From Podarcis gaigeae (lineage: Eukaryota), in NCBI GenBank assembly GCA_964106915.2, contig OZ066923.1: a stretch of 64,000 bases of DNA; one strand, written 5' to 3'. The position numbers and the translations under genes are program-made. Under the pieces are notes generated by a model, which was not told where the DNA came from, did not search any database, and saw nothing but the letters and a program-made list of their open reading frames with translations. Shown in pieces: positions 16,706 through 38,639 of this stretch; positions within the stretch are counted from its first letter, which is position 1, and each line of letters begins with the position of its first letter.

Positions 16706-17434
16706 TATTTGTAGAAACTAAAACGCACATTGTAAATACTGCAGTCTGAAGCTGTTTGAACTGAGAGTTGAACTCCTCTCCATGCTCAGGATTTTGTGTG
16801 CTGCCAGAGATTATGGAAAACTCAGAGTGGGAAGCCATTACTCTTGTATTTCCACCCATGGCTAGACAACTGCAGCATCATGTAAACAGGGCTCTCCTTG
16901 AATACTGTTTAGAAGGTTCAGCAACACATTGGAAGTTCTTGCAGCACCATACCACAGGCTAATTTGCATCTGTGAGATGATAACTTTTGAATATTTGTAG
17001 TTAGAAATCACCTGGGTGACCATAGTACATAGATTTCTGTTTGGATTGGTCACTTCTTGGTAAGCAGTGGTCTGTTTGGAGTTAATGCCCAGCCCTTTCC
17101 TCTTTGCATTCATTCTTGCCTTTTCCACAGCACTTCTGCCAGATTTCCATGTGATGCAGCCTTTGTTCCTCATACAGTGCTGCTTTGTGTGTGATACCAC
17201 GCAAGTTCCCCTGGGATGTTCTGGCTATTGGTTGGGTGCTGGGTAAATGGCTATCAGGCACCCTATGGAAAATCCATTTGTTTTCAGGAAAGGAGGAAAT
17301 TAACGTGAATGAAATCTTTGAGGCATAATTGTCTCCATGTATTTTGTATGTGACAGGGCAGAGGAGATACAGAGGAATTGTGGCATGTAGTTTTTGTCTT
17401 TCTCATTACCATTTCCCCCTTGCTCTATTTGCAG

Positions 17435-17523
17435 GAAAATTCTACTGCAAGCCTCACTACTGTTACAGACTTTCAGGTTATGCACAGAGGAAGAGACCGG
17501 CAGTGGGCCCTCTGTCAGGAAAG
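17435..17523 (+). CDS. MICAL3: MICAL3 LIM-domain exon 2 (KFYCKPHYCYRLSGYAQRKRPAVGPLSGK)
   Basis: tttgcag| acceptor and AAG|gtaggc donor; 89 nt, phase 1/0; supplies the last LIM CxxH ligands. Confidence 0.98.
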
Positions 17524-17716
17524 GTAGGCTGTTTCCTTGCATTTCCCAGATGAGACTGCTTTGCCATTTTATGTTGGGAAGTGGCTTTGGGTTGTTTGGA
17601 AGGGGGAGAGCAGTGTTGCAGAATCTTTCTGAATCCTATGTGCATTGATCTTGCCTGCCTTTATTAGCTGTAAACTCTTAAACAGAACACATAATGGAAA
17701 CTTTTTATCAGTTGTT

Positions 17717-17842
17717 GTTTTTATAAATTTGTTGGCTTACCAAAACCAGGACAGCAGTGTTTTTATAAATTTGTTGGCTTACCAAAACCAGGACAGCAGT
17801 GTTTTTATAAATTTGTTGGCTTACCAAAACCAGGACAGCAGT
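17717..17842. repeat. Perfect 3 x 42-bp tandem repeat
   Basis: Unit gtttttataaatttgttggcttaccaaaaccaggacagcagt at 17717, 17759 and 17801. Confidence 0.97.
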
Positions 17843-18464
17843 GTGTCTGGAGAGAGAAGATGAAAAGCTGTGCCAGTGATGTGCAAATAGGCACGTCGCC
17901 ATTCATATTTACTTCTGTCTATCCAAAATCCAATTTATGGTGTTGGATAATAAAAATAGGTTCTTTTTATCAGGGGACTATTGAAAAGTACTCATACCCA
18001 AAGAGTGGGAATTTAATAATTAAAACATAAAAATAAATTAAAGTAAATACTGCCTTGAGAATATATGTAATAGCTGATCGACTGGACAACGATTACATTT
18101 ACAAAGTAACATGAATTCATTTTACTTATGCAGTTAATTTTTTGGCAGTTGGTTTTACGGCAAGTAGTTCTTCAAGGCAATACTATGGAAAAATGATACA
18201 TGTGATACTATTATTTTTTGTTAAAATCAGCTAACCCCAGGCATGCCCTCCATATGGCTTTACTTGAAGAAGCAGTTAGATAAATAACAAAGATATACTG
18301 AGAATGTGTGTCCAGATCTGGAATATGCCTGAATAAACTAGGGTTATTGTTTCTCCTGGATCTAAAACCATAAAACCACCTTTTGTCTTTTTGCATTTGC
18401 TCACTTTTAAATTACATAAATTTAATAACTGCATCCTTCCTTGCCTGTTCCCCCCCCCCCCCAG

Positions 18465-18552
18465 GACAGCAAAGGGATCCAGCAGGACAACATGGCGGCT
18501 GACGGTGCCGGACGTGCAAACTCCATCTCAACTTCGTCAGAGAGGACTCCAG
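18465..18552 (+). CDS. MICAL3: MICAL3 exon (DSKGIQQDNMAADGAGRANSISTSSERTP)
   Basis: Poly-C then cag| acceptor; CAG|gtagct donor; 88 nt, phase 0/1. Matches recalled EAKGPLQD...NGRANAVASSTERTP. Confidence 0.95.
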
Positions 18553-18794
18553 GTAGCTCTGCTTCCTTGTTTGGCAGGGTGATGCAGTACTCGCTCCACC
18601 TCTTTGACAGAGTTAGGGTGGCAAGCCAGCTCCTGCAAAACACAGTTTCCTCAGTTGGGCACCACGTAGCCCAAAATCCTTTGGACTCCTTTTTCATGTG
18701 CCAGCTGATGGCTTTTGGAGTCCCCTTTATCTATGTCCAGTCAGAGGTTCTTGTGCAGATAATGGGGGAGTTTTTATCAGCACTAGGATATTAA
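18553..18794 (+). CDS. MICAL3: Alternative terminal extension of the short MICAL3 isoform (GSSASLFGRV...NPLDSFFMCQLMAFGVPFIY...GEFLSALGY*)
   Basis: Frame stays open for about 80 codons past the donor to TAA at 18792-18794. Strongly resembles the recalled C-terminus of a human short isoform (VAQNPLDSFFMCQLLAFGVPFLY). Confidence 0.82.
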
Positions 18795-21700
18795 TACAGT
18801 AATAACAACTTTTGTAACACTGTGTAACATGTGTGCAGGAGGAAATTAGGGGTTATGTGGTGGTGGGATTACATTATGGTTTGTAAGACAAAGCTGCTGT
18901 TCTGAATGCTGTCCAGGTAAACACAGACACCCAGTTCAAGATTTCTTGGGTAGGTAGAAATAAATTAAAAATTGCTAGTCATACCCAGAACAGACCAATT
19001 GAAATTAATGGACACGACTAACTTAGCTTAATTAATTTCATCAGGTCTACTCTGAGTAGAGCGTAGCTGGATGCAACCCTTAGTCTGCAAAATCTGCATT
19101 GCTGAGTGAATTAAATATAGCATTAGCATGGTATGAAGAAGTCCATTGACTGGATTTCTGTGTTCACCTGCAAAACTATCTTCTAGTTCTCACCAACATG
19201 GTGTCTGAATAGCAAAACATCAAAACCTTGTTGATACGTTTTGAACCATGCCTGCTATACATTCCTTGTTGTCTTTCACAGCCTTTAACTCTGGGTGATC
19301 TTGGTGTTGGCAGGTTGTGGAAATTTCTCCCAAATATATGCTTTGCTGTTCTGGACTGGGGCTGACAAACCAAGCTGTATGCTGTTGAGGGCATTCTGGT
19401 TAATCTTAAACTTGATTCCTGTCTCTGTGTGAGAGAGAGCGATAGACTCAATTTGTGCCACAAACTCTTGTTTGGACGGACTTTTACTTTGACCTTTTGG
19501 TGATTAAATTTGAATAGCACTTGATAAGAGGCCAGACTGGATTCTAGTTGCGGAATCTTCCAAGCCAAACAGATTTAGATTTTATTTTTTTATGTAGAAT
19601 TAAATTATATAGCCGTAGTCGTGCGTAGGAACTAAACTGTTACCCTTCCATTGGCTAAACGTTTCTAAATAGTATGAAAAGATCCAATTGAAGGATCATT
19701 CAAGATATGTTTTTTCATTTATTTATTTTTAGTTGTGTGCACTCAATAGCATTGTACAGTTTCTGTATTTGTGTGGCATTTCCCACCCAGAAGCAAAATG
19801 AAAGAGATTTAATATTTAAGTAAGCTCTGAAAAACATTTTGTATTAAGCAAGTCTTTCAAATGTGAAAACACAGCTTCTTGTAACTATTGGATAGGAGTC
19901 ATTTGGCTGTGGAAACACAGTTCTGGAATTTTGCACTAATTAAATTGCTTGATCAGAGATTGGATGTGGTTGTTCAGATAACTTTTAAGAGTTCAGACTC
20001 TGAATACTGCTTGTGTTGAGCTTCTGCCTCTGTTGTCATGAGACTGACAATCTTGCAGAAGTTGATTGCAGTTGGAGTTGCCAACTTGGTCTAGCATATT
20101 TCACCAGCTCTTTACCTTGTTAATTTCAGTTTAGCAATAATTATTCTTGGCCTAATATTGTAGTGAAACCTGTCCTACATTCCCTGTAAGCCATCTAACT
20201 TTTAGTTCTAGTTCCCTGCTGGTCAGGGCAAAAAGCAGACAATTTTTGGCTCTCTGCTGAGTTCAAAATTAACTTGAATGTATAAGTTTGCTAATCACTC
20301 AAAGAGTATGGGAAATTAATGTGTATTTTCATAGGAGGCTGCTAGAGGAATCTCTATATGTTTAAAGTTTAAGATCAGGACTCTTTCATGTGTCTTTGTT
20401 TACATATACCTATTTATGTGTCTATAGATATTGTAATCTCTACAAAGTAGAATCCAGCAATAATGAATTGAATAATTAATTCTGGCCTTTGTGTTATATA
20501 AGCACCATGAACTATTATAATAGTTAAAGACAGTGCTGGGGGGAAATATTTCAGATAATCAGAAGCCAGCATTTTATGTGTTCAGAGCTGATAAAAACGT
20601 TTCAGTCCCTGGATTCCAGCTGAAGTATCCTAATCAGAGAAGTTTCAGACTTTGGCAGTCCTCTGCGAGGCTGGTCTGTCCTCATGCAAACTCTGAATTG
20701 CCATTGAGGTAGAGATATAATTCTATTAACTGCATGTTTCGGACACTGGAATTCATGCAGAGATTGGCATTTCATAATGTGGAAAACGATGGTGATTTGA
20801 AAAGGGGGAAAATGTGATTTTAATAGAATGTAATTGGATGGTAGTGGGGGAAGCGGAGAAGTGCAGTCTTGGAACGAATAGAAATCTGCACCTCCCATTG
20901 GCCTGTGTTCATAGTCAGCTGCCCATTCCCGTGGAATAGGTAAATGCATGCTAGTGGAGCCGTGCTTACTCTATTTGCATGTTTCAAACAAATCTGCAAT
21001 CAGTATTTGCTTGGTTACTATGAAATTTTATGTCGCCTCCCTTCCCTACTTGTTGGCGAACTTGAATAGTGGAGAAGAGAGCTCTTCTGTACTGAGGCAT
21101 TAGAATAATGGTCAGGAAACAATAAGCACTTTTTATTGTGAGATAATTTCGCTCTCTGGCATGTGTGGCTCTTGCATTATAGGTGTTTTGTGACTTCCCC
21201 TATTCTGTTACAAAGGGGGAAATTAACTGATCTCAAAGCTCAGTATTTAGCCATTAGGATAGGCCAAATCTTCTCTTGATGTCCACCTCCTGGTCTGCCC
21301 AGGAGTGTGTGTGGCACATGTGAGTGCTTTAAGTGGGTTAGCTTTTGATGTTTGCTGCTATCCGGTTACACTTCTTGCACACTGTCTCCCAAACGTGCAA
21401 CCCTTTCTGCTGGTGCAGGGGTGGTGAAAGCTGTGACAGGCGCTTTCTTGTGCTGAACTCTGGCATGCTTCGGGCAAACTCTGTATTACGCCTTTTTCTT
21501 GTACTGTCTTCCTGGGATTTTGTGTCAAGCACTCTCTGCATTTGCCTTTGTGACACAATTGCTGCTGATGCTGGGCGTGGAAAAAAATCCCTTGCTTTTC
21601 AATGGTTGTATTCTGTAATAGTTGTATGTCTCTTGTATTTTGGAATGTTTTACAGTGAGTGTCATTTTTTATACATGTCTTTTTTTTTTTAACACGGAAG

Positions 21701-24700
21701 TATTGTTCTTTCTGCACTTCGTTGTAAATGTCTGTAAAATATTTTTGAATGTATTAATCCTCCTGTGGGTCCAGTGGGCTTGGAACAGTCTCTTTGCATT
21801 TTGCCCTTACAATTTTATATAAAGGCGGTTGGTTTTCACTCAATAACTTTTAGGGGTAATGAAATTAAGGTAATTCACCATGAGCTAGGTCACTGGAATG
21901 TTACACACATAGTCAAAAGCATTCTAATTAAAAAAAGAAAAGAAAAGAAATATAGGAAATTGAGAGAATTTGTACTAATATCCTCCTTTGAAAGAGGGGA
22001 AGTAAATAGTATTATCAGTGGAGTATATCTGTCCTTAACAGTGTATATTCCAGTGAAGTAAGCTAATTGCACTATAGTGAGGTGGCTGGAATGTGGCAAG
22101 TAATCATGAAATACTAGGACTTAAATATGACCTTTTTTCAGACTAACAGTCAAATCTTGGAACACATAGTTGCTGTTTTTAGTGGAGGCCAGCACTCCAC
22201 TATGGAATTTGCAGCATTTCACATGGACAGAAAGTTGGGTTGTAGGACTTCAGTTGCTCTTTCATATACTTGAAGGAGCTTTTGATGGGTGTCTAGTAGC
22301 ATGCACCCATATCTGCAGAATGCAAGCTGAATTTGCTTGTGTATTTGTTTTTAAAACACGGGAAGAGGGAGAGAGGGTGTAATCTTTGATCAGTGATTAG
22401 AGGTGCTCTATGCTCTTCTTTTATCAGTGATTAGAGGAGCTGCATCTTCTATTCCCTTTGATGCCATTTTGGCAGACTCTTCTTTCCTACATAAAAAGGT
22501 GTATCAGTAAATTTGTTCCTTTCCTCAATAGAGCACTGAATAATTTTGTTTAAAAAAACAACAGAAATTATATTGTTGGTTGTAACAAACATATTGTTGA
22601 ATCCTGAAACTGCATTGGTTCATCCAATGTATACCAATGAGAAGCATGAATTGCCATGGAATTGCACAGGGAGAAGTTAAGACATATTTCTGTGGGCCAT
22701 GATTCAGTATAAGCATGGTTAAGCTCTGTATTAAATTGTGCTAATGGTAATGTTACAACAACATACCTGCAGTATAGAATCAGTGAAGAATGTCCGTATA
22801 TATGTAATTTAATAAGATTATATAATGTCTCCTGGACACAAATTTTAAAATATTAGCATACTACCTTTAGTCTCAACAAACCATGATCTGAATGAATATA
22901 ATTCTTTGTTTTTTGACATAATAACTAGTGTATAAGTATTTTTTTTGATTCAGCGTATGCTTTACAAACTATAAATTGTGCTAAACTTGATCTCAGTTAA
23001 TATAGTTCCTTAAATTATTATTAGCTGTCGCCCTGGTTTAAAATGCACTTGATAGGTAATGCAAAATTCACTTGCCCCAAATTTGGCATGAACTCTGCCA
23101 GTACTCAAACAGCACCAATTTCTGTTTTAACAGAACATGTTCTTTACAGAATTAATCATAGGTTAGCAAACATTTGGGCTGATGTGATACAATTTTCCAC
23201 CTTTTTAGGAAGTCTAGAGACGGTCTTGGTAACCTTGCACAATGAAGGCAGCATTTGAGAAGTTTTTTTGAAATGTTTTTTGAAATGTTGCTTGGTTTTT
23301 ACTGTGTCCACTGCAGCAAGATAGCAACCATTTTTAAAAAACTCTGCAGGCCAATCAAAACTGTGTGCAGTGGATTCTGAACAAGTAGGAATAAGGATAC
23401 AGTTCTTTTTCTAAATGTTACTGTGGACCTGAAGCTGGGTAGAACAGTGGGACTCCAGGATTTATGCCACATTATGTGCAGACAGACCCAAGCAAGGTTT
23501 GTCTCTTCAAAGAGGTTAGGATTATTTTATATATTAAAGCAGCCACCTGGAATTTGATGGCTGCTCCACAAGAGGCCCTAATCAGCATTAATTGCACAAT
23601 AATAGATTGGCTCTATTGTGTAGTCTGTAAACAGTGTTTCCATGCGCTCTGGCTTCCGACACAGTGTTCCGCTGTGCCAGAAGCGGTTTAGTCATCTCCT
23701 GTACAGAATACCAGTGTATGGTTGCATTTCTTGTGGCCTGCACTGAACTGCCATAATGTATGGAATCACTTTTAGTATGAAATCAAAGGTCCCGTGTAGC
23801 TGGAAGTTTACTGTTAAGCATGCATGTTGAATGGCTGAAGATAGTGTCCCTACCCTGTGAAAAATAGCCTTCCAGAATTTAGCTTGGAAGCTTTCTTGAG
23901 AGACTGTTCCTAGACCCCGTTGCATCCCCTTCAGTGTTCTTACTAGGTTTTTATGGTGGGATTGATGTGGAGGGAAGAATGTGTCCAACCACAGGGCACA
24001 TGAGGAGGCAGCAAAATGAGGAGTCTGGACATGGTGCATCAAGGGAAAACGATGCACATAGGAAAATGCAGTGTTATGTGCTTTCAAAGTGAACATCACT
24101 TTTGAATAGCTACAGGGAAGAAATGAAATGTAAAATTTATACAATTGTTGGGGATCCACCATAAAATCCTGTTGAGAACACTTTTTTCCTGGGAGAGATG
24201 AAATTCCTTTCTCTTGTCCTTTCATCCCTTCTCAAACCTTGTAGATGATAGTGACTTGTATTGTTATTTGTGTATATATGCATTTCTTGAGGGATGATGT
24301 GAGTTATTCTGAGTATTTTCTTAAACAGAATGCAATATTACTTGTGTGTCAGCGAAAAATACCTTAAATCTCGTAAGAAACGGGTTTTGTTTTTTCCCCC
24401 TCCCAGCAATTAAACTGGGGTGTGCTTAAATGCCCCCTATTTTGAAATGCAAAATCCGAGGGGAAAAAACATCCCCTGCTTTGAGATTTAAGCTGTGGCT
24501 CAGGGAAGAATGGGAAATGTGCTCTGAAAAGCCTCACATCTCAAACTTGAGATGTTGTACCCTTTTTTATTTTTGTTTTCTTGCCCTTACTGTGGTGGTG
24601 CAGAGTTGCATTTGTGTTCAAATTCTGTAACTTTGGAACTCTTGTTGCTGTGAAAACAATACGTTTTTGTGCAAATGTTACCTCTTCACGTTAAAAAGGG

Positions 24701-24706
24701 AATAAA
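24701..24706 (+). terminator. Candidate distal poly(A) signal for the short isoform
   Basis: AATAAA preceded by TGTA and T-rich sequence and followed by a T/GT-rich tract, at the end of the repeat-poor region. A proximal AATAAA is at 18959-18964. Confidence 0.4.
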
Positions 24707-25930
24707 TTCCAAACAATCTTTCTGAGGTTTCAAAAGTTTCTGAGTTTTTCTTTTCTACTCCATTGTTTATCTCCTTTGATTCAAGCCTAAAGAGGTGGGG
24801 GATGAAGACTTCCTGGAGATGGAGTTTCTGCAGTTGGTCCATTAGATTGAAATTAAGTGTTGGCTAGTGCTAAGAAAAATATACTTTAGAGTAAGATTTG
24901 GCAGGACAAGGATTTGCTTAACATAATTCAGAGCTTGCATTTCCAGTTTATGGTTCTATAGTATGCATGGAGTCCCGAGGCAATAAGATGCCTTAAAGTA
25001 ATACATTGGTTCTTCTTAGAGGAAAAATGAGAACTTTGACCAGCAGCCAAAAATTTGTCCAGTGATTTCAAGTCAATATATAAAATTCAGCCTCTGTCCC
25101 TGTTCTCTTCGACTCCTTGCACCCTGCTTCCCAATATCACATGTCTTTAGGTCCCTTGCCTGCTGCCAACAACACATGTATTTCAAGGCCCAAGATTGAG
25201 AGGTTTTTTCCTACGGTAACTACAGTATCTCTCTCTTTCTGCTAAAGTGCATTGCTGCTAATATTCTCATTGTTGCTAACAACATCTTCTAAACAATCAG
25301 AATGTTTATGAACATCCTATTACCTCACAAGCTCAGCAAGTTTCTTACAGGAGAAGGTAGTGATAGCTGCTCATGCTCTAGCCCTCATACTGAGAAACAG
25401 AACCTAGTATGTAACTATACAGAAAGGGACAATCTTGATTCTAAATAAATGGAGCAAGGATAGCAAACGTGGTACAATCCAGATATTGTTGCACTACGAC
25501 TCGCAGTATTTTTGACCAATGGTCATGCTGGCTGGGGCTATTGGGGGTTAGAGTCTTAACAATATCAGGAAGACACTGTGTTGGCTAACCCTGAACTCCA
25601 TCAAAGGTGTGGAGCAGATTTAACCTCTTCCTCGGTGTTCCCTGAGTGAACCCCCTTAATTCTAAATAAGTATGTAAGAGCCATTCACTGCTATTGAGAG
25701 AAGTAAAGCACTGCACTAAGGGAGCCAAACTTGTCTTCCACTATTGATACCTAATGAGCTGTTCCTCTAAAACTGGGGTTTTTCATGCAAGCCAAGTGTG
25801 GATTTTTGCACAAAGTAACACAACAATGTTTGTGCATGCACATGTACACAAATACACAATCCTTCCAGTGCACAAGCCCCTCCCTTCCATACTACTAAAG
25901 AGCTGGAAACATGGAGGACAGGTTTAAGGG

Positions 25931-26130
25931 NNNNNNNNNNNNNNNNNNNNNNNNNNNNNNNNNNNNNNNNNNNNNNNNNNNNNNNNNNNNNNNNNNNNNN
26001 NNNNNNNNNNNNNNNNNNNNNNNNNNNNNNNNNNNNNNNNNNNNNNNNNNNNNNNNNNNNNNNNNNNNNNNNNNNNNNNNNNNNNNNNNNNNNNNNNNNN
26101 NNNNNNNNNNNNNNNNNNNNNNNNNNNNNN
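25931..26130. other. Assembly gap (200 N) with duplicated flanks
   Basis: 25702-25930 is repeated at 26131 to about 26354. Confidence 0.97.
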
Positions 26131-27189
26131 AGTAAAGCACTGCACTAAGGGAGCCAAACTTGTCTTCCACTATTGATACCTAATGAGCTGTTCCTCTAAA
26201 ACTGGGGTTTTTCATGCAAGCCAAGTGTGGATTTTTGCACAAAGTACACAACAATGTTTGTGCATGCACATGTACACAAATACACAATCCTTCCAGTGCA
26301 CAAGCCCTCCCTTCATACTACTAAAGAGCTGGAACATGGAGACAGGTCAAGGGGACACAAACTGTTAAATCCATATCAAAAAAGTTTCCAGGGGTTTATT
26401 TTCAACTTTAAGAATATCCCACAGAAATAAATATGCATCCACTGTTTTTTATTAATACCTGGTCAATGAGAATGATGTGTAGCCCTCTTGCTTGTGGTAT
26501 ATTTCTAATGTTGCTTCTGTTCTGAATCTGTTGTCCCACCTTTATTCTCCAAATCAGATAATAATTTTATCACGGTGGCAACACTTTCTATTTCTCAAAC
26601 ATGGCAAGGCTGCCGGAGTTCAGGAATGAACTGGTTTTGGCAGTAGTCAGCTTTGGAAGGGGTTTCTTTAAAATATTATTGGTTCAGCTCACTCTCGAGA
26701 CTGTGGGAGAATTTCATACTCCTAGTTTTTCTTTGCAAATTTGCAAACTAATTAAATGAACACTGGAAAACTTTTCTTTTTGTCATGCACTCCTTGTCAT
26801 TGAAAGTAATAGCAATAAAAGGCACGTGGAAGGCCTTGAGAACACTGAACTCCTAAAACACCTCTGGTCCTGGATGGTAAAATAGTTTGCACCTTGAATA
26901 AATAGCATTGCTTTGCCAAGTGCTACAGAAACCAGCAATAAAGCCAGATACTTTCTTCCTTCGCTTCATCTGACTATTCAGCTAACAATCGGTGTTGATT
27001 AAATACTATGCACTTAGCACTAGACTTGCTGAGTTTCATGATAAACATTGACAGTGTGTACCTCTGTTGTGCACATAGTAGAATGTGGTACGTTATCTCC
27101 TTTGCATCCGCAATCATATTAAAGATCCTCAGCATGTTGCTTAAAACTGTCTGTATCCAGCTAGACCATAGACAGCATCCTATGATAAA

Positions 27190-27372
27190 TCAGATCATAG
27201 AATTGATTGTAGAGTTGGATGTGATCCCAAGGGTCATCTTGTCCAAACCCTTGCAATGCAGGAATCTCAACTAAAGCATCCATGACAGATAGCCATCCAA
27301 CCTGTGCTTTAAAACCTCCAAGGAAGGGGAGTCCACACTGTCAAACAACTCTTACTGTCAGAATATTCTTCC
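27190..27372 (-). mobile_element. CR1 LINE 3' end fragment
   Basis: Similar to 41816-42010 (gggtcatc...aacccc.tgcaatgcaggaat...ccatccaacct). Confidence 0.7.
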
Positions 27373-28529
27373 AGATTATCTGGCTCAGTATTGCCTATAC
27401 CAGAGATGGGAGAAATGTGATCCTCCAAATGTTGCTGGACTCACTCCCATGATCCCTACTCAGCATGGTCTGTGGTCAAAGATGATGGGAGCTGGAGTCC
27501 AGTAACATATGGAGGGCCACAGTTTCCTCCATCCTTGTTATGTCTGTTTCACACATAACAGGCTTGGGAATTGGTCCAAAACTAACAAAATGAATTTCAA
27601 TGTAAGGTTCTACACTTAGGCAGGAAGAACCAGCATGCCCTATATAAGATAGGCAAGTAGTCCAGCTTTCTAGCTTTCATTTCTTTTCCTCTCAGCTTTA
27701 TAAGCTTACAGCCACCTCCATGGAACAGGGGCTTCGAAAGATAGAACCACAACTATAGTTAGTGAATTCAGACAACATGCCAAACCACAGTTTGCTAAGC
27801 CCACCTAAAAACGCAGTTTGCAAACCCAACCCAAGCCATGGATTCGGATTCTGAGTGTGGGCCAGTTGCAAAACCAGAAGAATCTGCCTTATACCAGGTC
27901 AAGACTACTGCGGTTGATGAGAGGTCTTGCCCATCACCGGCCATCTGATGTTTTTAAGTGGAGATGCCAGGAATTCTAAATTCAAAGCATGTTCTCTACC
28001 ACTGAGCTATGGTGCTTACCAATTCAACTTGAGCCAGTATGGAAATGAGTTTGCATTAGGCCTGCTTTAGTTGCTAATTTGAAAAATTAAACTTGCATGA
28101 TGAACCATCAATGCTATTAGAAGTCTATGGAATCCCCTTTTATTTAGTATTGTCAGCTTTTAGACACTGTTCATGAGAGTGCCTAAGGCAAGATTTGAAA
28201 CACACAAACTTCTATGAATAAAAATTAACTTTTGCTACAATCCTTCCCTGTCTCCTCCTTCCTCTCCCTTTTCTGTCATAAAAGGCCTAGTGATCCAAAC
28301 GGAAGCTCTGGGATAACCTTCTAAACACATAACACATAAAGGGGAAAGATCTGCAGGTATTAAGATAGATACATCACAAACTATAGGGAAGGCCCTTCAC
28401 ACTGTGGCACATAATCCCTTTCCTTGCAGCTGCATCCCTTGCTGCCATCATAAAATTTGAAATACAAACATTACTTTCTCACTTCTTTAATGTGCTCTTC
28501 TGCAGTAAAGTGTGCAAGGAGCTCTATAC

Positions 28530-28746
28530 CAGGGGTCAGCAAACTTTTTCAGCAGGGGGCCGGTCCACTGTCCCTCAGACCTTGTGGGGGGCCGGACTAT
28601 ATCTTTTGAATTCCTATGCCCCACAAATAACCCAGAGATGCATTTTACTCATGTAAAAACACACTGATTCCCAGACCGTCTGCGGGCCGGATTTAGAAGG
28701 TGATTGGGCCGGATCCGGCCCCTGAGCCTTAGTTTGCCTACCCATG
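28530..28746. mobile_element. hAT (Charlie-like) MITE, 217 bp
   Basis: Imperfect terminal inverted repeats CAGGGGTCAGCAAACT and CATGGGTAGGCAAACT; perfect 8-bp duplication CTCTATAC (28522-28529, 28747-28754). Confidence 0.92.
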
Positions 28747-31700
28747 CTCTATACATTCAAATCAAAATGCACCTCACCATGAGGCAATGGTTTTATGTTT
28801 ATAACATACTTCTCCTGCTTCTACATTTCAAAACATCTTGCCAGAAATATCAGCTTCACCTAAAAAAAAAAATGCAACCCAAAACCCGCCATAAAACATA
28901 CAAAAAGAATTGAAATAAAATCAGCAGCATGAGCAAAACACGTATCAGCTGCAAGTAACCTCTACCTCATCTTCAAACCCCCTGAAATAAAAGTTTTTAC
29001 AGAAAAGCAAGAGACCAAGAGTCAGGGGGCCAAATGAGCATCCTGGGAAAGAGAATTCCAAAGCCTGACTTCAGTGGCCCTTCCCCACATACACACACAC
29101 CCATGTAACCTGAGAAGACCATATATGAAGCTGCCTCATTCTTAGCTCCATCTAGCTCAGAATTTTCTGGCAATGCTACTGTACGGTTGTAGATGGGGGT
29201 CTTTCCCAGTCTTACATATAAATGCCAGGGATTGAACCTGTAACCTTCTGTATGCCAGAGCTATGGCTGAGCCTATGGCCTCTCTGAAAAGGCAGCAGGA
29301 CAGAGCTTGGGACTCAGCTGAAGACTAAGTGAGAAAGTAGGTTTCATATGTGCAAAGGCAGTTCTTAAGGTATCTTCCACCCCAGGTCATGTAAGGTTTC
29401 AAATGCACTTGGAATTGGGTTTATGTAAGGTTTATCAGCACTTGGAATTGGGCCCAGAAGCAATTATGGAGCCAGTTAAGTTAGTTTTGGAGTCCACATT
29501 CCTCCTATAGACAAGGCTGTTTTGATAACCTGCACCAATATCAAAAATACATCCTGTGAAGTAATACAGAAAAATGAATTAATACAGTGAATTAAAACAA
29601 CAAAGAAACAGCCATAGATAAAGACTGTGTTTATCTAGAATATAGCAACTCCCCCGTGTTTCTAGTTTGTCACAAGTATGTGTGTGAACAGTCATATAAG
29701 TACTGTAGTTAATGAAGTAACACACACACACAGTCTCAAGGATATAGATATGTATTATGGTGCAGTATATTTACTTTAAACTCTTTTAATATTTAAAAAA
29801 ACTCAGAGCAACAATAAAGCAGTATCATAAAAAATGGATGCAAACACTTCTCATAGTCTACTGAGGCTAAAGGGCTCAAGCCTGGGACTAGGCCAGAGGG
29901 AGAGAGCTGAACCAGCATAGGGTAGTTGCTAGGCAACTGGTGACATTCATTCTCTAGTACTTCTCCCATGCTTTGTAAACAGGCCTTGTGCTAAACTGTT
30001 TTTGGGGAGACAAGGAATAGATAGGATATGATGGGGCAGAATGTAAAGGTTGCCAAGTACCTGGATATTTTTTTTTTTAAATCTGGTGTCTAGAAACTCA
30101 ACTCATCAATTTAAAGGTACAGACACTAGATTGCAAACTCTGCTTAAAGTAACTAATTGACTCTGCACTCCTATATACATTTAACTGGGAATAAGCCAGA
30201 TTTGACTCAGTGCAAGTTACTTTTGAGTAGACATACATAGGGCTATGCCGTTAGTATTACAACTGCTGAATGCCCTTCAGAGGGCGAGGGCACCAGAAGT
30301 TGAGACTTTTGACACACCTTCTCCATCTGGGGTAAGTGATAATGTAAACCAGGGGCATCCATTTTCTTCTGTTGAGCGTGGCCTCATTCTGCAAAGGTTG
30401 GTCGGTAGGGGCCAGAGAGGTGTATAGCCACACAGGAGTCAGGATGAATAATATAATTGCTGTCTTCTAGCACAGCGGTGGGCAGAATTATCTACTGGTA
30501 GATCTCCGGGTAATTTCAATTTGATCTTACTTCAACAACAAAAATGCTACCCCCTGCTAAATTATACTGGTGAAATGAAGGAACTGTGTTGCAGGAGAGG
30601 GGATACTTTTGGGTGGAACGACTTGTGACTCAGTCCAATTCTATCATCATCACTATCATTTTATGCTATTAGGAAGTATTTGCCAAAATAAAAGCAATTA
30701 CTGGAGAAAACATCTCTAAATGTCCAGAGTCTATGCAGCTCAGTCTTTTCATGGGAGAAAATATTAACTTACAGCTCAAACCTCTAATAAGTTCTCTTTT
30801 ACTAGCATAGCAGACAGGCTCATAATAACAAGATACTGGAAAAACTGACTAACAAAATAAAATTGCACAAGGTTTGAAGCTCAAAGACTCATTTGCAACT
30901 GAATGGTACAGCTTTGTTATGTACATGTCTCCCCTCGCATTATAAAACCTTCCAGTTAACATAAATTATTTATCACCTTCTATACAAATGGTAGTCTGGA
31001 ACAAGAACTTATTATGTCATTTGGATGTTATTTTGCACGTATTGCCTATACACCATCTTCTGGACTCAGTCCAGTTCAAAACAAATTCCTGGGTTCAACA
31101 TTTTTATTACAGTATTATTTTATTTTAGTGTATATATTTCACACGAGGCTTGGTGGATCTTGGGGTTCAAATAAAAATACAAAATATATAATGCAAGCCT
31201 GACATCAGCCTAGCCCTAGCAAATAGGGGACTTTATGGTAGTCAAAGACAGGATGATGATATAACAAAGCAGTGCTGCACATAGACCCTCTTCATATGTT
31301 CCTAAAATCTATTCATGTGGTGATATGTGTGCTTCCCCTCCACACACACCTACTTACACTGAGTGGGAAGAAGAATTTCAGGAGAATTGTAAGTGTATTC
31401 AACTAAATGTGCTTGTTCCTCATTGTGATCAGGAACCCTGTGCCATCAGAATTCCCAATCACAGGGGCACAGTGGGATAGGGCCGCTGCCAGTAGCCCCC
31501 TTACCAAGAATGGAGAACTTGTGGCTCTCCAAATGATGTTAGATTACACCTTCCACTATCCCTTACCACTGGGGCTAATGCGAGTTGTGGTACAACGAGA
31601 TCTGGAGGCCACAAGTTCTCCTTCCCTGCACTACACAGATAGGCTTCAAGAAAACCCAAATAAGACTTATGTGAAATGACATGGCATCTCACATGTTCTG

Positions 31701-31889
31701 ACAATCTTGCGCCTGGATGATTCTGTGGGTACCTGAAAATAAAAGTGGTGTTTGTGTACACTAGGGGTTGGGGGACATTTTTCAGCCCAAGTGTTACTTA
31801 TCCTTCTAGTCAACCTTCTGCAAGTTATATGCCGGTGACCAGTGGAATCAGAAGCAAAAATGGACAGAATAATTTTAACTAGACTAAGC

Positions 31890-32343
31890 AGTTAGACTGG
31901 TGACTGGATGTGGCTGCCGAAACCTGAAAGACCTACATTGGCTCCCAGTACGTTTCCGAGCACAATTCAAAGTGTTGGTGTTGATCTTTAAAGCCGTAAA
32001 CAGCCTCAGCCCAGTATACCTGAAGGAGCGTCTCCACCCCCATCGTTCTGACTGGACGCTGAGGGCCTTCTGGTGGTTCCTTCACTGCGAGATGTGAGGT
32101 TACAGGGAACCAGGCAGAGGGCCTTTTTGGTGGTGGCGCCCACCCTGTGGAATGCCCTCCCACCAGATGTCAAGGAAATAAACAACTACCTAACTTTTAG
32201 AAGACATCTGAAGGCAGCCCTGTTTAGGGAAGTTTTTAATGTGTGATATTTTATTCTGTTTTTAATCTGTTGGCAGCTGCCCAGAGTGGCTGGAGAAACC
32301 CAGCCTGATAGGCGGGGTATAAATAAATAAACAACAACAACAA
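31890..32343 (+). mobile_element. L2-clade LINE 3' end, 5'-truncated
   Basis: LKDLHWLPVRFRAQFKVLVL is typical of an L2 ORF2 C-terminus; frameshifted; (AAAT)/(AAC) tail. Confidence 0.85.
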
Positions 32344-32989
32344 CTTGGCACAGTAGTGTAGTTTTACACACATCAAACACTCTTCTCCATCCAGGCAAAT
32401 GAGTCATTATGAGAGTTTAACATACCAACCAGGTAAAAACATCCAAGAAAATTAAATGAGTTACAGGTGTGGTCCGGGGCGGTGGGGGGGTGGCGGGGAG
32501 GAGGAGAGAATGACTGGAGAAGAGATGGTGGGCTGGTCAGAGTTCCAAGAGCTATCTCTTGGTATTGTACCTTCGTTGGGATTTGGCTCAGTTTTTTTAA
32601 ATCACAAGATGATGAAGGTGACCTTTCTCAACAAACAAAGCTTTGTTGATTTTTATGGAATTCAATATTTTCTGGATGCCTCTGGCAACCTTACAGAATA
32701 GAATTGTGCACACTGATATTTATTTAGCTGCTATGTGTTTAAAAAGTGCAATGTATTCCTGATATCTATTGACCTTTTTTTTTTTTAAAAAAAGAATGCC
32801 TTATGTATTCTAATTAATCAAGGGATTGGAAGCTTCTATAATGCTTCTGATGTAAATGCAGCCATTGATAGTTTTATTTGGCAGCTGCCCTGATTGAATG
32901 CATTAGATTGGACACTTGTTGAAGCCAATGATTTGAAAGCAACATAACTTGACCGGAGTTTATCAGGTTATGATTTAGGAACACATGTA

Positions 32990-33175
32990 GGCCTTTGCCA
33001 GATCATTGGTCCCTATTGCGTAGCACTGTCTCCTTTGACAGCATCTCTTCATGGTCACAGGCAAAAAACTTTCCCATCTCACCTGCTTTCTGATCCTTTA
33101 ACTGAGGATGCCAGAGATTGACCCTGGAACCATCTGCATGTGAAGCATGTGTTTTATCACTGAGCTGTAGTCCTT
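32990..33175 (-). mobile_element. Old tRNA-derived SINE (Squam2-like); related copies near 27885-28015(-), 29120-29280(-), 35570-35730(-) and 42880-43055(+)
   Basis: gatgccag.gattga.cctgg.acc.tctgcatg...actgagct is the reverse complement of a tRNA-like head. Confidence 0.6.
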
Positions 33176-36100
33176 GTCAGCCATGGTAGAAACTGAAAAA
33201 TGCTAGCCAGTTACGGAGATGTTTTGAGAGGAAGGAATGGGGGAACAATCATATTGTTAATTGATGATTACAGCCAAGCAATGGATCACCAAGGAAAAAT
33301 ATGGAAATTCCCTCTAACCCAAAGTATTTGTCCCCATCCCAATGGGTGGAAAGTAGTCAATACCAGAATTGTTTAGCACAGAACTGAACATCCTGACAAT
33401 TTACTTCCAGCAGAACCTTTTGGGCTTCAAAGTATATGGGTAAAGAGCAGTGCTTGTAAAATATTGGATTCCAGAGGTGGGACTGAGCAGGATGCCCTGT
33501 GGTCAATATTGTGGGGCTTCTGTTCCTGCACCCAGCAGCACAAACAAAACAAATAATTTAAAAGAAGACAATACATGCAAACTAATTGTGTTTGTGCATA
33601 GTTTTGCTCAGCATGGTACAAAACGATCCTTTTTTAAAAGCCCTGATAGGTCTGATGTGGGGAAAATATCTAAGAAAATTCCTTTAAGAATTCTCTTAAT
33701 AGCTTTTCTTGCTTTCCTGTGATCTTCTATCAAACACAGTGGCCTGGTCTGAAGCTGCAAAGATGCAGTTTGACCTCTTCACTTTGCAGTTCTGTGGTTA
33801 GGTTCTTTGTGGGCTTGTTTTCTCTCTACTAAGGCTTGTCTCAGTGGCTTCCACGTCAGATACCAAATGCTGATTTCTACTTCTGATTCCCAGACTATAA
33901 TGTATTCCCAGATTCCAAGTATGATGGCTAAAAGATTGAGCTGTGAAAAAGAATGTCCCTGATTCCACCATGTAAGCCGCTACCTTCTCAGATCTAGCCC
34001 CTACCCCACCTCCATGTCTACAATATATAGATAACACTGGCATTTGTTGTAAGGATTACAGAGAGAATGGCTAGGGTTAAAAGAAAGAAACAAACACTTC
34101 AACCAAGCATGGGAAGTCTTATGAGATCTACTTTAAAAAAACACCCTGAAATGCTGAGTTCTGTCAACTGGTGCCAGGCACAAAATAATCACTGAAGGGC
34201 AGAGCTAGAAACAAAATGGCACAGCCAATTACCTACTTACCCACCCCAGGCACTGGGGTAATTTGCATATGCAATTGACAATATACTTCTGAGTACAGGT
34301 CAGGGATTCTAATTGCCGCCTTTGTTGGGTGGGAAACTTTTTGCTGTGGTTATTGAACACCTGGGAGTCATGAGCTCTTGCTGATCTACAGCAAATTATC
34401 CAGTATTCCTCTTCCTACACTGTAGAAAACCATGTAGACTTCATTGGTTTTTTAAACAGCTAATTTTTTTGCCATATTGCAAATTGCTTTTGAGTTTATT
34501 GTGTTTCACATTCTACTGCTGTTTACGAAAAAGTGTAAAGTCTACTTGATATTGACAAAATTAGCTTCTCAGCCCTTAAGATCCTGGACAAAGTACATGA
34601 GGCCTCTAACACCGACTTCTCTAACCTGGCACTCTCCAGCTATTTTGGACTTCAACTCCCGTCAGCTCCAGCCAGCATAAAGTGTAGTATAAATGCTTAT
34701 GTATGTTCAGAGTTTCTGCCCATCCTAACCCACGCACCTCACAGAAGCAGTAGTTGCTGACTAGCTTCCTACCCTCACTGCAGAACCATTGCAAAGGAGG
34801 CAACAATCCAGTCAGTCCCTGATTTGTTTTGTCAAAATTGCATTGGGGAATGATGGTTGACTTTATGGGTGGGGGTGGTGTTCAGACAAATAGCTGTCAG
34901 TTAGCTTAATTTTTTAAAAAGTCACAGAAAACGGAGATTATTTTAGGAACATTCTATACAAGGGAAAAAGCCAAAGGACACGTCAGAGGAGTGATGTTAT
35001 CTCTGTCCCTGGCATTCCTTCTACCAAGAAGTTGGCTCGGTCAAGGATTGAAATAAATAAATCTTCTGTCAGCTTTCACAAAACAGCCAAGCGGGCTGCA
35101 CACTTATGAAAAACAGCTCCTTTTGGTTGATCTGTGTACTGCTCATCGCCAAATGCTTCCAAAACATAAAACTGTTGAGGAATAAAACACTTGTCTATTT
35201 AAGGATGTTTACATCTTACAACCTGATTTTTTTAACCGCCATATTAGCACATTTACCCATAAAATAATGCAGCAGGATAATAGAACTTTTAAGTGACGCA
35301 TCTGTGTGCAATACTGGTGTAATAGTGGTACTGTATCTGCTTGACTTTAATAGTAAATGGGACAATTATTTAACTTCCTTTGGTGGTGGATGGCTGCATG
35401 GATTGTGAGGTTGTATACTGAATACTTTTTCATATAAAACTACCAAATACTGTCTTCTCAGTTTGCCTTTGCAACAACCCTGATAGGATGATCGCTGTTG
35501 TAACTTGCCCAGAGTGCAAAACCTAGTCACTGGTATAAGATACATATAAATCTGTCTTACAACTAATCAGATTGTTTGGTCCATCTAGGCCAGTGTTGCC
35601 CACTCAAACTAGCAGGATCTCTCCCAAGTTATTGGGCCTTTCAGTTACAGTGATCCTTTTAACTGGACATGTAGATAAAAACTGGAATCTTCAGCAAGCA
35701 TAGCGTATGTTCTACCAGTGAGCTATGCCCTTCCCATTAAGTGTGTCACACTTTTTAACCATAAATGTCTTTTGGCATCAACTACACTATTCAGTATTCA
35801 AAGATTTATGTAAATCATAACTGGGTTATTTGGTATATGTTTGTTGTAGTAACGGAGCCTGAGTAAGATATAAGTGTCTACTGTGTTGACATCAAAAATC
35901 AATTCATATATTATGAAAAAAAAAATTAACACACACAAAAATAGCCATAGATTATAATATAAAAAGATCAACGTACAGACTAAGCCATCTTAAACAATCA
36001 TGTTACCATATTATAGAAATGTGATCCTAACTCCAGTTAGGAGTTTAATTCCAGTTATCAACAGTTAAACTAACCTTTATCAAATGAACATTAACAGGAC

Positions 36101-36749
36101 TATTTATCCAGTTTGTTTCTAAAACTAACCTCATTTCTTGCTCACCACCGTTGTGTTATGAATGTCTTAAACTTGAACTAATTATTGCTTCTTCCTGGAA
36201 TGGTAAAAATACTCCAGTAACTACATATCCTGCCAACAGTCCCCTTTTTATGTGCTCTGGAAACAGGCACATAATTCCAGTGGGGTCATTGCAGTGCAAT
36301 ATAGTTTTGCCTGCACCCTAACACTTAACAAAATCTTGTATCATGTCCTATGCCTGTTGTCTTCCTGCTCTGAATTTTATAGTCCTGTTGCTAGAAACAT
36401 GGAACAGATCAAAACAGAAATTATAACAAAATTTATATGCTAGTGCAAATGTGAACTTGGTCATTATTCAGTCTGTTTTGAAATGTCACATTAATATTAA
36501 GCCCCTGAAAATTTGGGGACAGGAGTCGAGATTTACTGACTTTTAAAATCTTGGTTCTTGCATCACCCAATGCTCTTTCATTACACAAAATTCATTTTGC
36601 ATTTGCTATGTAAGCCAAGATTGATAGACCACATTTCCAGACTATGCCTCCTGGTTCTATGAGTTTGTCATTGGGAGATGACAAAACTCGATTTTGGCAG
36701 AGTCTAGTGATGGTGGTGTTGGCGATGCTGGTTTTTATCATCATTATGA

Positions 36750-36905
36750 GAGGTGGTGGACTCTCCTTTCTTGAAGTTTTTTTTAAGCAGAAGTTAGATG
36801 ACTATCTATCATGTATGATCTAGTTGAGATTCCTGCATAGTAGGGGGTTGGACTAGATGACCCTCATGGTCCCTTCCAACTCTACAATTCTATGGTGCTA
36901 TGATT
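36750..36905 (+). mobile_element. CR1 LINE 3' end
   Basis: gggggttggactagatgacc...ggtcccttccaactctac.attctatg is the canonical CR1 terminus. Confidence 0.75.
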
Positions 36906-37121
36906 TTATTATTATTTACCCTTCATAGCTCTGGTCCAAATACCTAAGAAAATGGAGGGGAAAATATGAATAAGCTTTAATCGGTCATCTTTTTCATAGT
37001 CAGGGTAGTTAATGGATTCACTCAGTGCTCTGTTTAGAGTTGAAAGGGGGATTCTAATCCATGTTAATAAGTGAGAAATGAGGGAAGAAGTGATAGCATT
37101 TCTGTATTTATTAACCCAAAC

Positions 37122-37710
37122 CGTGGTTACCAGAATCCGGGGACACTTTTTTTTTTCTTTTTTTTTAAGCTTAGTAGCAACAGGGAGTCAGTAGTGGGGA
37201 TAGTGAAGCAAAAGACCCTGGGCCCAAGCACACATGCATATTGTATAAAGGTGCAAAGCCCTTCTTTCGCACCCTGTGAAACATAAATGAGCAGAGACTG
37301 GGCAACGGCGTGCCCCGCGCTCGTGACTCCCGAGCCTTCCCCGATCTCTTTCCCCCTTTGTTTTGACAGATCAGGGGAGGCTTGGGAGTCACGAGAGGGC
37401 AGGAGTTGCCCAGGAGGGGCCAGCCTGGTAGTGCAGTTGGCTCTGGCCGGCTTCAGGAGCTGCTCACTGTCGTGGTGCAGGAAAAAATGGTGGGCGCCAC
37501 GGCAGCGAGCAGCGAGCAGCGAGCAGCTCCTGAAGCCAGCCAGAGCCAACTGCACTAAGAGACTGGCTCCAGGCTGCTGAGGCTGCCGCTGCCGTGTTTC
37601 CCAGGGACAGATTTGCAAATCAGGGGATATTCTGATGACGGATTTTGTTCGGGGACAGATTTGCAAATCTGGGGACTGTCCCTGGGAACCGGGGATGTCT
37701 GGCAACACTA
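37122..37710. mobile_element. Non-autonomous hAT (Blackjack-like) element with internal hairpin
   Basis: 8-bp duplication ACCCAAAC (37114-37121, 37711-37718); imperfect ends CGTGGTTACCAGA and TAGTGTTGCCAGA; subterminal gggaca repeats. Confidence 0.8.
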
Positions 37711-37841
37711 ACCCAAACCAATGAGAATAAACATATACATGCATGCAACAGACTGAGGTGGGAGAGCAGACTTGTATACCATTTTTGAATGATCCCCTAG
37801 GTTTAAAAAATACAACAACAACAACAATTGAACTCTAGTAG

Positions 37842-38443: not shown

Positions 38444-38639
38444 TTCCCAGTGTAAATGGCGTAGAGGAACCCAGTATTGCAAAGAGACTGCGTGGCACAC
38501 CAGAGCGGATTGAACTGGAGAATTACCGTCTCTCGGTACAACGGGAAGAGGAGTTGGAAGAAGTCCCTGAGGAGACCTTGGCAGAGCACAACCTGAGCAG
38601 CGTGCTAGACAAAGGAACAGAAGAGGATGTACCCAGCAG
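38444..38639 (+). CDS. MICAL3: MICAL3 exon (VPSVNGVEEPSIAKRLRGTPERIELENYRLS...EVPEETLAEHNLSSVLDKGTEEDVPS)
   Basis: ttccccag| acceptor and AG|gttatt donor; 196 nt, phase 1/2; MICAL signature TPERIELENYR. Confidence 0.97.

What the first reader, a model, noticed from the sequence alone, without database searches (positions are those of the whole stretch)
18465..18794. Donor read-through yields a short MICAL3 with a hydrophobic tail and no autoinhibitory C-terminus
Seen: if the donor at 18552 (CAG|gtagct) is ignored, the frame runs about 80 more codons and ends in a charge-poor stretch (FFMCQLMAFGVPFIYVQSEVLVQIMGEFLSALGY*). Known: the C-terminal coiled-coil/bMERB domain of MICALs binds Rabs and mediates autoinhibition, and MICAL2 lacks it. 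From recall, a human MICAL3 short isoform ends in a very similar peptide, which would mean conservation across amniotes of a nominally intronic ORF. Inference: a splice/poly(A) switch makes a Rab-independent, possibly constitutively active actin oxidase whose tail may be a membrane-targeting helix. I know of no functional study of this tail.
Basis: partly seen in the sequence, partly recalled or inferred. Interest (0 to 1): 0.78.

Follow-up and report, generated by a model that had tools for sequence, protein, structure and literature searches.

The report
Conserved short MICAL3 isoform tail
In this lizard's MICAL3 gene, one small exon can either be spliced onward or be read straight on, and reading on gives a short actin-oxidising enzyme ending in an 80-residue tail; this tail is conserved from an unidentified distant vertebrate relative to mammals and is already annotated in mammals, but nobody seems to know what it does.

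Summary
Exon 18465-18552 ends at a weak donor (CAG|gtagct). Ignoring that donor leaves the frame open for 80 more codons, to TAA at 18792-18794.

The open frame is not chance.
- Ten orthologous sauropsid contigs and one more distant vertebrate contig keep the acceptor, the donor, the frame and the stop position.
- All indels are multiples of three, and dN/dS is about 0.2-0.4.
- In the 34-codon core, variable sites by codon position are 7/1/20.
- The ORF is the best-conserved element in about 9 kb.

RNA from two related species shows both outcomes. One is the splice 18552>38444. The other is unspliced read-through, running on for at least 3.9 kb at exon-like depth, and it makes up about a fifth to a half of transcripts. 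The upstream intron has zero depth. So this is a composite terminal exon, that is, an intronic polyadenylation isoform.

The same tail ends GenBank proteins named MICAL3 in orangutan and camel. A preprint reports RT-PCR of a MICAL3 internal/terminal exon in human cells that is regulated by CELF1 and ELAVL1. The isoform is therefore already known.

What remains open is the function of the tail. AlphaFold predicts two helices. Hydropathy is below the transmembrane range, so a classical membrane anchor is unlikely. Constitutive activity is untested.

The parts
17435..17523 (+). Upstream constitutive exon encoding the end of the LIM domain and the start of the linker (K-F-Y-C-K-P-H-Y-C-Y-R...P-L-S-G-K); it ends in phase 0
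   Evidence: Sequence read. A GT..AG joint 17521>18463 (cut +2) is seen in raw RNA reads and in two RNA contig sets. The peptide matches the named MICAL3 proteins P0021 and P0026.
18465..18552 (+). Shared 88-nt part of the composite exon: 29 codons plus one base, encoding a disordered linker
   Evidence: the joint into 18463/18465. Conserved in 11 other contigs with the same acceptor. AlphaFold pLDDT is below 50 here.
18553..18558 (+). Alternative 5' splice site GTAGCT. It departs from the GTRAGT consensus at +4 and +5. When it is not used it also encodes Gly-Ser.
   Evidence: It is invariant as CAG|gtagct in all ten sauropsid contigs and reads CAG|gtaccc in L014. A loose end behind 18552 in X24, X1 and X2 matches 38444-38473 exactly.
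18553..18791 (+). Read-through coding extension, 80 residues counting the Gly codon that spans the donor. Predicted as an amphipathic helix, then an N-P turn, then a hydrophobic/amphipathic helix with a nearly invariant core (residues 70-103 of the 109).
   Evidence: Alignments A1 and A2. dN/dS is 0.11-0.49. Codon-position variability in the core is 7/1/20, p = 4e-5. There are no differences from a 94.5%-identical relative across 18510-18803. RNA contigs cover 18523-19370 (X1) and 18523-19088 (X2). AlphaFold predicts helices 31-70 and 72-106, with pLDDT 80-89 over residues 71-100.
18792..18794 (+). Stop codon TAA of the short isoform
   Evidence: The stop is at the same place, or one codon later, in all sauropsid contigs.
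18795..22400 (+). 3' UTR of the short isoform, at least this long. The poly(A) site was not located.
   Evidence: There is sense-strand RNA depth across nearly all bins, and contigs at depth 15-26 (X1) and 3-14 (X2). The intron 17636-18371 has depth 0 in all four runs. X2 record 14 has 417 more letters beyond 22400. Candidate signals include ATTAAA at 22730 and AATAAA at 24701; neither was tested.
38444..38473 (+). Start of the next exon, used when the donor at 18552 is spliced (long isoforms). The intron is 18553-38443.
   Evidence: The 30-nt loose-end consensus from RNA matches here exactly and nowhere else in the window.

Best explanation
Window 18465 to at least 22400 is a composite terminal exon of the MICAL3 orthologue of a lizard.

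Two outcomes are possible. If the weak 5' splice site at 18552/18553 is used, the 88-nt exon is joined to the exon at 38444 and the long, Rab-binding MICAL3 is made. If it is not used, transcription and translation run on. Translation adds 80 residues and stops at 18792. The mRNA ends somewhere in the 19.9-kb intron after a 3' UTR of roughly 4 kb or more.

The product keeps the N-terminal part up to and including the LIM domain. It lacks everything downstream: the acidic region, the partner-binding regions and the C-terminal bMERB domain. It carries a tail under purifying selection at the protein level.

Shown here:
- the frame;
- its conservation and coding-type substitution pattern;
- both RNA forms in two related species;
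- the presence of the tail in named mammalian MICAL3 proteins.

Inferred:
- polyadenylation within the intron;
- loss of Rab and bMERB control, which follows from the position of the stop;
- that the tail is a two-helix module acting through a specific hydrophobic interaction. That interaction could be peripheral membrane binding, binding of a partner, or packing back on the enzyme. It is less likely to be a membrane-spanning anchor.
For: Frame and signals.

Orthologues: 15 ORF proteins at 57-84% identity. The most conserved stretch lies inside the read-through.

Genomic contigs: all ten sauropsid contigs keep the acceptor, the donor CAG|gtagct, the frame and the stop. Indels are of 3 or 6 nt only. 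A more distant vertebrate contig, L014, has the same layout at 44% identity.

Selection: NG86 dN/dS in the read-through is 0.11-0.49. Variable sites by codon position are 30/21/48 overall and 7/1/20 in the core. There are 0 differences across 18510-18803 against about 3.7% in the flanks versus L001. In BLASTN against distant sauropsids, 18462-18772 is 75-86% identical; among the contigs that also hold the LIM exon it is 79-86%, as well kept as that exon.

RNA:
- splice joint 17521>18463;
- a loose end at 18552 that matches 38444;
- read-through contigs that branch exactly 30 nt before the donor, at depth 15 against 12.8 for the spliced branch in X1, and 8.5 against 37.8 upstream in X2;
- coverage that continues to 22400 and beyond;
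- zero depth in the upstream intron;
- all raw reads in the orientation of sense RNA, except at the repeat at 18982-19014.

Annotation: PNJ08532.1 'MICAL3 isoform 14, partial' (orangutan) and KAB1254552.1 '[F-actin]-monooxygenase MICAL3' (camel) end in the tail directly after LIM and linker.

[quoted passage not shown] Terminal use rises on CELF1 or ELAVL1 depletion (10.1101/373704).
Against: - No poly(A) site or 3' end was seen. Only one read-laying run was allowed and it stopped at 22400, so long-lived intron retention is not formally excluded.
- The RNA comes from related species (organisms A and B), not from the window's own organism. Tissues are unknown, and the raw-read depth is only a few reads.
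- There is no peptide evidence that the tail is translated.
- Some mammal-like ORFs (P0018-P0020) have a degraded core, so the tail may be lost in some lineages.
- The preprint does not give coordinates. That its exon is this one is likely but not proven here.
- Synonymous divergence in the read-through (0.2-0.9) is lower than in the 29 shared codons (0.5-1.6). Part of the conservation may therefore be RNA-level.
Confidence: 0.85

Rival explanations
1. The open frame is a chance ORF in an intron, and the RNA past the donor is ordinary unspliced pre-mRNA or intron retention with no protein product.
For: An open run of 81 codons occurs at 1.3-2.7% of positions in this window. No poly(A) site was found. 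X2 also has an unspliced contig over another intron, at 17109-17463.
Against: The frame, stop position and donor are kept in 11 other species with only in-frame indels. The core shows 7/1/20 variable sites by codon position. Read-through depth equals or exceeds the spliced branch in X1, and the neighbouring upstream intron has depth 0. Named mammalian MICAL3 proteins end in the tail.
Confidence: 0.03
2. The stretch is conserved mainly as RNA, through splicing and polyadenylation control elements next to a regulated 5' splice site (for example CELF1 or ELAVL1 sites). The peptide itself is incidental. The short isoform then serves chiefly to lower output of full-length MICAL3, and its hydrophobic end may make it unstable.
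For: dS is lower in the read-through than in the shared exon. There are no substitutions at all against a 94.5%-identical relative. Terminal use of a MICAL3 exon is regulated by CELF1 and ELAVL1 in human cells. From general knowledge, hydrophobic C-termini derived from non-coding sequence are often degraded.
Against: Third-position changes dominate (7/1/20 in the core) and dN/dS is well below 1. Specific polar and Gly/Pro residues are invariant from the distant vertebrate to mammals while their codons vary. Conservation stops close to the stop codon.
Confidence: 0.07
3. The tail is a classical tail-anchor: a single membrane-spanning helix inserted post-translationally, making the short MICAL3 an integral membrane enzyme.
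For: A hydrophobic run lies within 35 residues of the C-terminus. The tail is charge-poor. The only weak PDB profile hits are to a membrane segment of ABCB10, at E = 0.65.
Against: The best 19-residue Kyte-Doolittle mean is 1.51, below 1.6, and the unweighted Hessa sum is +6.5 or more. Q80, G85, P87, E94, Q98 and E102 are invariant inside the run. The last 18 residues are amphipathic rather than uniformly hydrophobic. The PDB hits are not significant.
Confidence: 0.1

Closest known systems
Annotated short mammalian MICAL3 isoforms, such as GenBank PNJ08532.1 'MICAL3 isoform 14, partial' (Pongo abelii) and KAB1254552.1 (Camelus dromedarius). By my recall only, the human RefSeq short isoforms are also of this kind; these were not compared here.
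   Same: They have the same architecture: LIM end, linker exon, then the read-through tail with the same core (Q-N-P-L-D-S-F-F-M-C-Q-L...E-V-L-x-Q-I-x-G-E-F) and a stop at the equivalent place. Identity to the window peptide is 54-58% over 109 residues.
   Different: The last 6-7 residues differ by lineage. The lizard-like group (window, L001, L002, L009) ends L-S-A-L-G-Y, the other sauropsid contigs end in a Q-P-x-D-Q type, and mammals in a W-Q-x-V-x-Q type. The first helix is less conserved.
The human MICAL3 'alternative last exon' validated by RT-PCR in the CELF1/ELAVL1 study (bioRxiv 10.1101/373704)
   Same: It is described as a terminal exon that contains a 5' splice site and can behave as an internal exon, giving a protein with a shorter C-terminal region. 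That is the mechanism seen here in lizard RNA.
   Different: The paper gives no coordinates in the text I could read, so identity with this exon is an inference. Regulation by CELF1 and ELAVL1 was not tested for the lizard.
MICAL2, the family member without a bMERB domain
   Same: The short MICAL3 would share the MO-CH-LIM-only layout and the lack of a Rab-binding, autoinhibitory C-terminus. This follows from the stop position and from family knowledge (PMC11315924, PMC11557892).
   Different: The layout arises here by isoform choice, not by gene structure. The 80-residue tail has no detectable counterpart. A profile search of 1.84 billion representatives found only 7 proteins, all alignable with this same tail. 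Pfam gave no hit.
Other composite-terminal-exon (intronic polyadenylation) isoforms, for example SPTBN1 and PPP3CB named in the same preprint
   Same: There is competition between a 5' splice site and downstream cleavage/polyadenylation, and a short alternative C-terminus is encoded by read-through.
   Different: The read-through peptide here is unusually long (80 residues). It is more conserved than the adjoining constitutive linker exon.

Membership tests
MICAL3 orthologue (gene identity of the locus) | The LIM-domain end and post-LIM linker match MICAL3 proteins | tested here: met
   The translation of exon 17435-17523 matches the G-K-F-Y-C-K-P-H-Y-C-Y-R-L-S-G...P-L-S-G-K segment of P0021 and P0026, which their sources name MICAL3. 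The linker plus tail aligns at 54-58%.
MICAL3 orthologue (gene identity of the locus) | N-terminal FAD monooxygenase and CH domains upstream in the same transcript | not tested
I did not examine these.
Composite terminal exon / intronic polyadenylation isoform | The same exon is seen both spliced at its 5' splice site and read through in RNA | tested here: met
   One search shows a loose end at 18552 that matches 38444. It also shows contigs and reads continuous across 18553, and zero depth in the upstream intron.
Composite terminal exon / intronic polyadenylation isoform | An in-frame stop lies in the read-through, followed by a 3' UTR | tested here: met
   TAA lies at 18792-18794. RNA depth continues to 22400 and beyond.
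Composite terminal exon / intronic polyadenylation isoform | A cleavage/poly(A) site inside the intron, with a drop in coverage beyond it | tested here: inconclusive
   No molecule ends were reported within 16900-22400. There are several hexamer candidates.
Tail-anchored membrane protein | One sufficiently hydrophobic transmembrane segment close to the C-terminus | tested here: not met
   The maximum Kyte-Doolittle 19-mer mean is 1.51. The insertion-energy sum is positive. Invariant polar residues and a G-x-P lie within the run. These are simple scales, not a dedicated predictor.
bMERB-less MICAL architecture (MICAL2-like) | The open reading frame ends before the exons for the C-terminal coiled-coil/bMERB domain | tested here: met
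   The stop at 18792 precedes the next MICAL3 exon at 38444 and all later exons. I did not locate the bMERB exons themselves in the window.

The most novel reading that the evidence does not exclude
The 80-residue tail is an autonomous, vertebrate-wide targeting or regulatory module: a two-helix hairpin with an invariant hydrophobic core. It would either place a Rab-independent MICAL3 on a specific membrane, lipid surface or partner, or fold back on MO-CH-LIM as a substitute brake. Either way it would define a second, unstudied mode of MICAL control that is switched by splice-versus-polyadenylation choice.
Probability: 0.3. Interest if true: 0.6.

Novelty: already known. Interest (0 to 1): 0.35.

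Why it matters
MICAL enzymes are potent actin-disassembly factors, held in check by their C-terminal bMERB domain and released by Rab GTPases. A conserved, sometimes abundant isoform that removes that half and adds a selected 80-residue tail would be regulated and localised differently from the MICAL3 usually studied.

Knock-downs, antibodies and constructs aimed at the C-terminal half would miss it.

The isoform is in databases, so it is not a discovery. What this work adds:
- the tail is under clear protein-level selection, from an unidentified distant vertebrate to mammals;
- it is better conserved than the adjoining linker;
- read-through makes up roughly a fifth to a half of transcripts in two lizard-related RNA data sets.

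That gives a concrete reason to test the tail experimentally.

Tried and rejected
- Pfam scan of the 109 residues: no family even at E = 10.
- Profile search against PDB sequences: only non-significant hits (E = 0.65 or worse) to a membrane segment of ABCB10.
- ESM Atlas: no usable hit.
- Foldseek of the AlphaFold model against PDB: no match. The model has a low pTM of 0.33, so this says little.
- Profile search of 1.84 billion representatives: only 7 hits, all ORF fragments or partial models. Full-length short isoforms are probably hidden inside clusters represented by long isoforms, so this search could not show how widely the isoform is annotated.
- Paper searches for 'MICAL3 + intronic polyadenylation' (0 papers), for RefSeq/UniProt isoform accessions (one unrelated variant report) and for 'MICAL3 isoform/short/transcript' phrases: none found a study of the tail.
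- The shorter GFP-MICAL3 construct in PMC7199855 ends differently, judging by its reverse primer, so it is not this isoform.
- Poly(A) hexamer listing: it did not single out a site.

Steps left out on purpose:
- I did not fetch or compare contigs for the mammal-like hits P0011-P0016. Some may be human, and P0016 in particular looks primate.
- I made no comparison with human sequence.

Full report
WHAT IS THERE

The window carries part of a MICAL3 orthologue on the + strand. An exon at 17435-17523 encodes the end of the LIM domain and ends in phase 0. Its acceptor AG is at 18463-18464. The exon runs 18465-18552 (88 nt), with the donor in the context CAG|gtagct.

Translating 18465-18794 gives 109 residues and then TAA at 18792-18794.

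An open run of this length is only mildly unusual on its own. In this window, 1.3% of AG|GT sites and 2.7% of all positions are followed by 81 or more open codons.

CONSERVATION

A word search with the 109 residues returned 15 short ORF proteins at 57-84% identity. In their alignment, the best-conserved part is not the constitutive exon. It is a stretch inside the read-through, roughly residues 70-103.

I fetched the DNA for ten of these, all sauropsid-like contigs. I deliberately left the mammal-like ones alone, because some may be human.
- All ten are genomic and colinear with the window.
- All keep the polypyrimidine tract and AG, an 88-nt (once 85-nt) exon, the identical donor CAG|gtagct, an open read-through frame, and a stop at the same codon or one later.
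- The only indels are of 3 or 6 nt.

Nei-Gojobori dN/dS in the read-through is 0.11-0.49, mostly 0.2-0.35. Counting variable sites by codon position gives 30/21/48 for the whole read-through. For the 34-codon core it gives 7/1/20 (chi-square p = 4e-5).

Against a 94.5%-identical relative (L001) there is not one difference between 18510 and 18803. The flanks differ at about 3.7% and carry indels.

In BLASTN against the distant sauropsid contigs, 18462-18772 is 75-86% identical. Within the 9 kb examined, among the contigs that also hold the LIM exon, it is 79-86% identical and is the longest and best-scoring match. That is as well kept as the LIM exon at 87%, and the match ends just before the stop codon.

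A profile search of 1.84 billion representatives added a more distant vertebrate ORF, P0017, at 44% identity. Its contig L014 has the same acceptor, donor (CAG|gtaccc), frame and stop layout. Its taxon is unknown to me.

Three further mammal-like ORFs (P0018-P0020) have a degraded core. This hints at loss or relaxation in some lineages, and I could not identify which.

RNA

No RNA run of the window's own organism was offered. Runs of two close relatives were offered instead, coded organisms A and B, holding 0.64-0.73 of the sampled words. I laid two raw stranded RNA-seq runs (X23, X24) and two contig sets (X1, X2) on 16900-22400.

X1 and X2 are RNA, because they carry the exon-exon joint 17521>18463.

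Both outcomes at the donor are present.
- Spliced: a loose end behind 18552 in X24, X1 and X2 has a 30-nt consensus that matches 38444-38473 exactly and nowhere else. The long form therefore splices 18552>38444 across a 19.9-kb intron.
- Read-through: contigs begin exactly 30 nt before the donor, which is the branch point of a k=31 assembly graph, and run on unspliced. They reach 19370 in X1 (depth 15, against 12.8 for the spliced branch and 18.3 upstream) and 19088 in X2 (depth 8.5, against 37.8 upstream).

Further contigs and raw reads cover nearly every bin out to 22400, at depths equal to or above the exon. One X2 contig continues 417 nt beyond the laid stretch.

The upstream intron (17636-18371) has depth 0 in all four runs. 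This argues against general pre-mRNA or DNA contamination.

All raw reads, except at a repeat at 18982-19014, have the first mate on the minus strand. In the usual stranded libraries that means sense RNA.

I read this as a terminal exon with a 3' UTR of about 4 kb or more, used in roughly a fifth to a half of transcripts in those samples. I could not locate the poly(A) site. No molecule ends were reported in the stretch, hexamer candidates are several, and only one read-laying run was allowed.

IS IT KNOWN?

A cluster look-up gave source names for proteins that end in the homologous tail directly after the LIM domain and linker:
- 'MICAL3 isoform 14, partial' from Pongo abelii (PNJ08532.1);
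- '[F-actin]-monooxygenase MICAL3' from Camelus dromedarius (KAB1254552.1);
- a Cervus LIM-domain protein.

[quoted passage not shown] It adds that terminal use gives a shorter C-terminal region, and that this use rises on CELF1 depletion and, less so, on ELAVL1 depletion, as validated by RT-PCR. The text gives no coordinates, so identity with this exon is likely but inferred.

Reviews of the family mention multiple isoforms without discussing this one. None of my six paper searches found a study of the tail peptide.

WHAT THE TAIL MIGHT DO

Pfam, PDB sequence profiles, the ESM Atlas and Foldseek gave nothing.

AlphaFold on the 20-sequence alignment predicts a disordered shared exon (pLDDT about 45) and two long helices at residues 31-70 and 72-106, separated at a conserved N-P. 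pLDDT is 80-89 over residues 71-100, but pTM is only 0.33.
- The first helix is amphipathic, with a peak hydrophobic moment of 0.57.
- The second starts with a 16-residue hydrophobic run containing an invariant Gln and an invariant G-x-P.
- It continues as an amphipathic stretch with invariant Glu and Gln at i, i+4, i+8 spacing.

The best 19-residue Kyte-Doolittle mean is 1.51 and the summed insertion cost is positive. A classical membrane-spanning tail anchor is therefore unlikely. Peripheral membrane binding, binding of a partner, or packing back on the enzyme all remain possible.

The invariance of specific polar, Gly and Pro residues argues against a mere hydrophobic degron.

Synonymous divergence is lower in the read-through than in the shared exon. 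Some RNA-level constraint, plausible next to a regulated splice site, probably adds to the protein-level constraint.

VERDICT

The splice/poly(A) switch, the deep conservation and the loss of the C-terminal half all hold. Constitutive activity and membrane targeting are untested, and the latter is not favoured in its strong form.

The isoform is already annotated in mammals, and its exon's dual use has been reported in human cells. The novelty class is therefore 'already known'.

STEPS LEFT OUT BY RULE

- I did not fetch contigs for hits that might be human.
- I used no human sequence.
- I left the N run at 25931-26130 alone.

Noticed in passing
window 17104-17272: This block in the intron just upstream of the LIM exon is 70-74% identical to distant sauropsid contigs. 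It reads like an exon of about 113 nt: an acceptor ttttccacag near 17130 and a donor GG|gtaaat near 17243. The length is not a multiple of three, and one frame is open. An X2 RNA contig covers 17109-17463 unspliced. It may be a conserved poison or alternative exon inside the LIM-coding region.
   Followed up: partly
window 18982-19014: A short repeat lies inside the 3' UTR. Reads from both strands pile up here with loose ends on both sides, and the relative L001 lacks 23 nt at 18993-19015.
   Followed up: no
L004, L006, L010, L011, L013 (inside the read-through ORF, at the codons aligned to window 18663-18674): In several non-lizard sauropsid contigs, a second CAG|GTAGCC sequence lies within the read-through frame. 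It could serve as another 5' splice site. The window has CAC GTA GCC there instead.
   Followed up: no
P0018, P0019, P0020: These mammal-like ORFs are homologous to the tail, but the invariant core is degraded (for example F-F-L-S-Q-L and A-L-R-M-P-L in place of the conserved motifs). This suggests lineage-specific decay of the short isoform's tail. Their taxa are unknown.
   Followed up: no
P0037 (XP_030893558.1) and P0038 (KAK2506197.1): Two long automatic gene models, from seal and pangolin, contain the tail internally. In the seal model (P0037), the one I examined, the tail is followed by unrelated residues before the acidic exon. Both look like mis-joined models rather than a third isoform.
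   Followed up: partly
window 25931-26130: A run of 200 N lies inside the 19.9-kb intron. I left it as it is.
   Followed up: no
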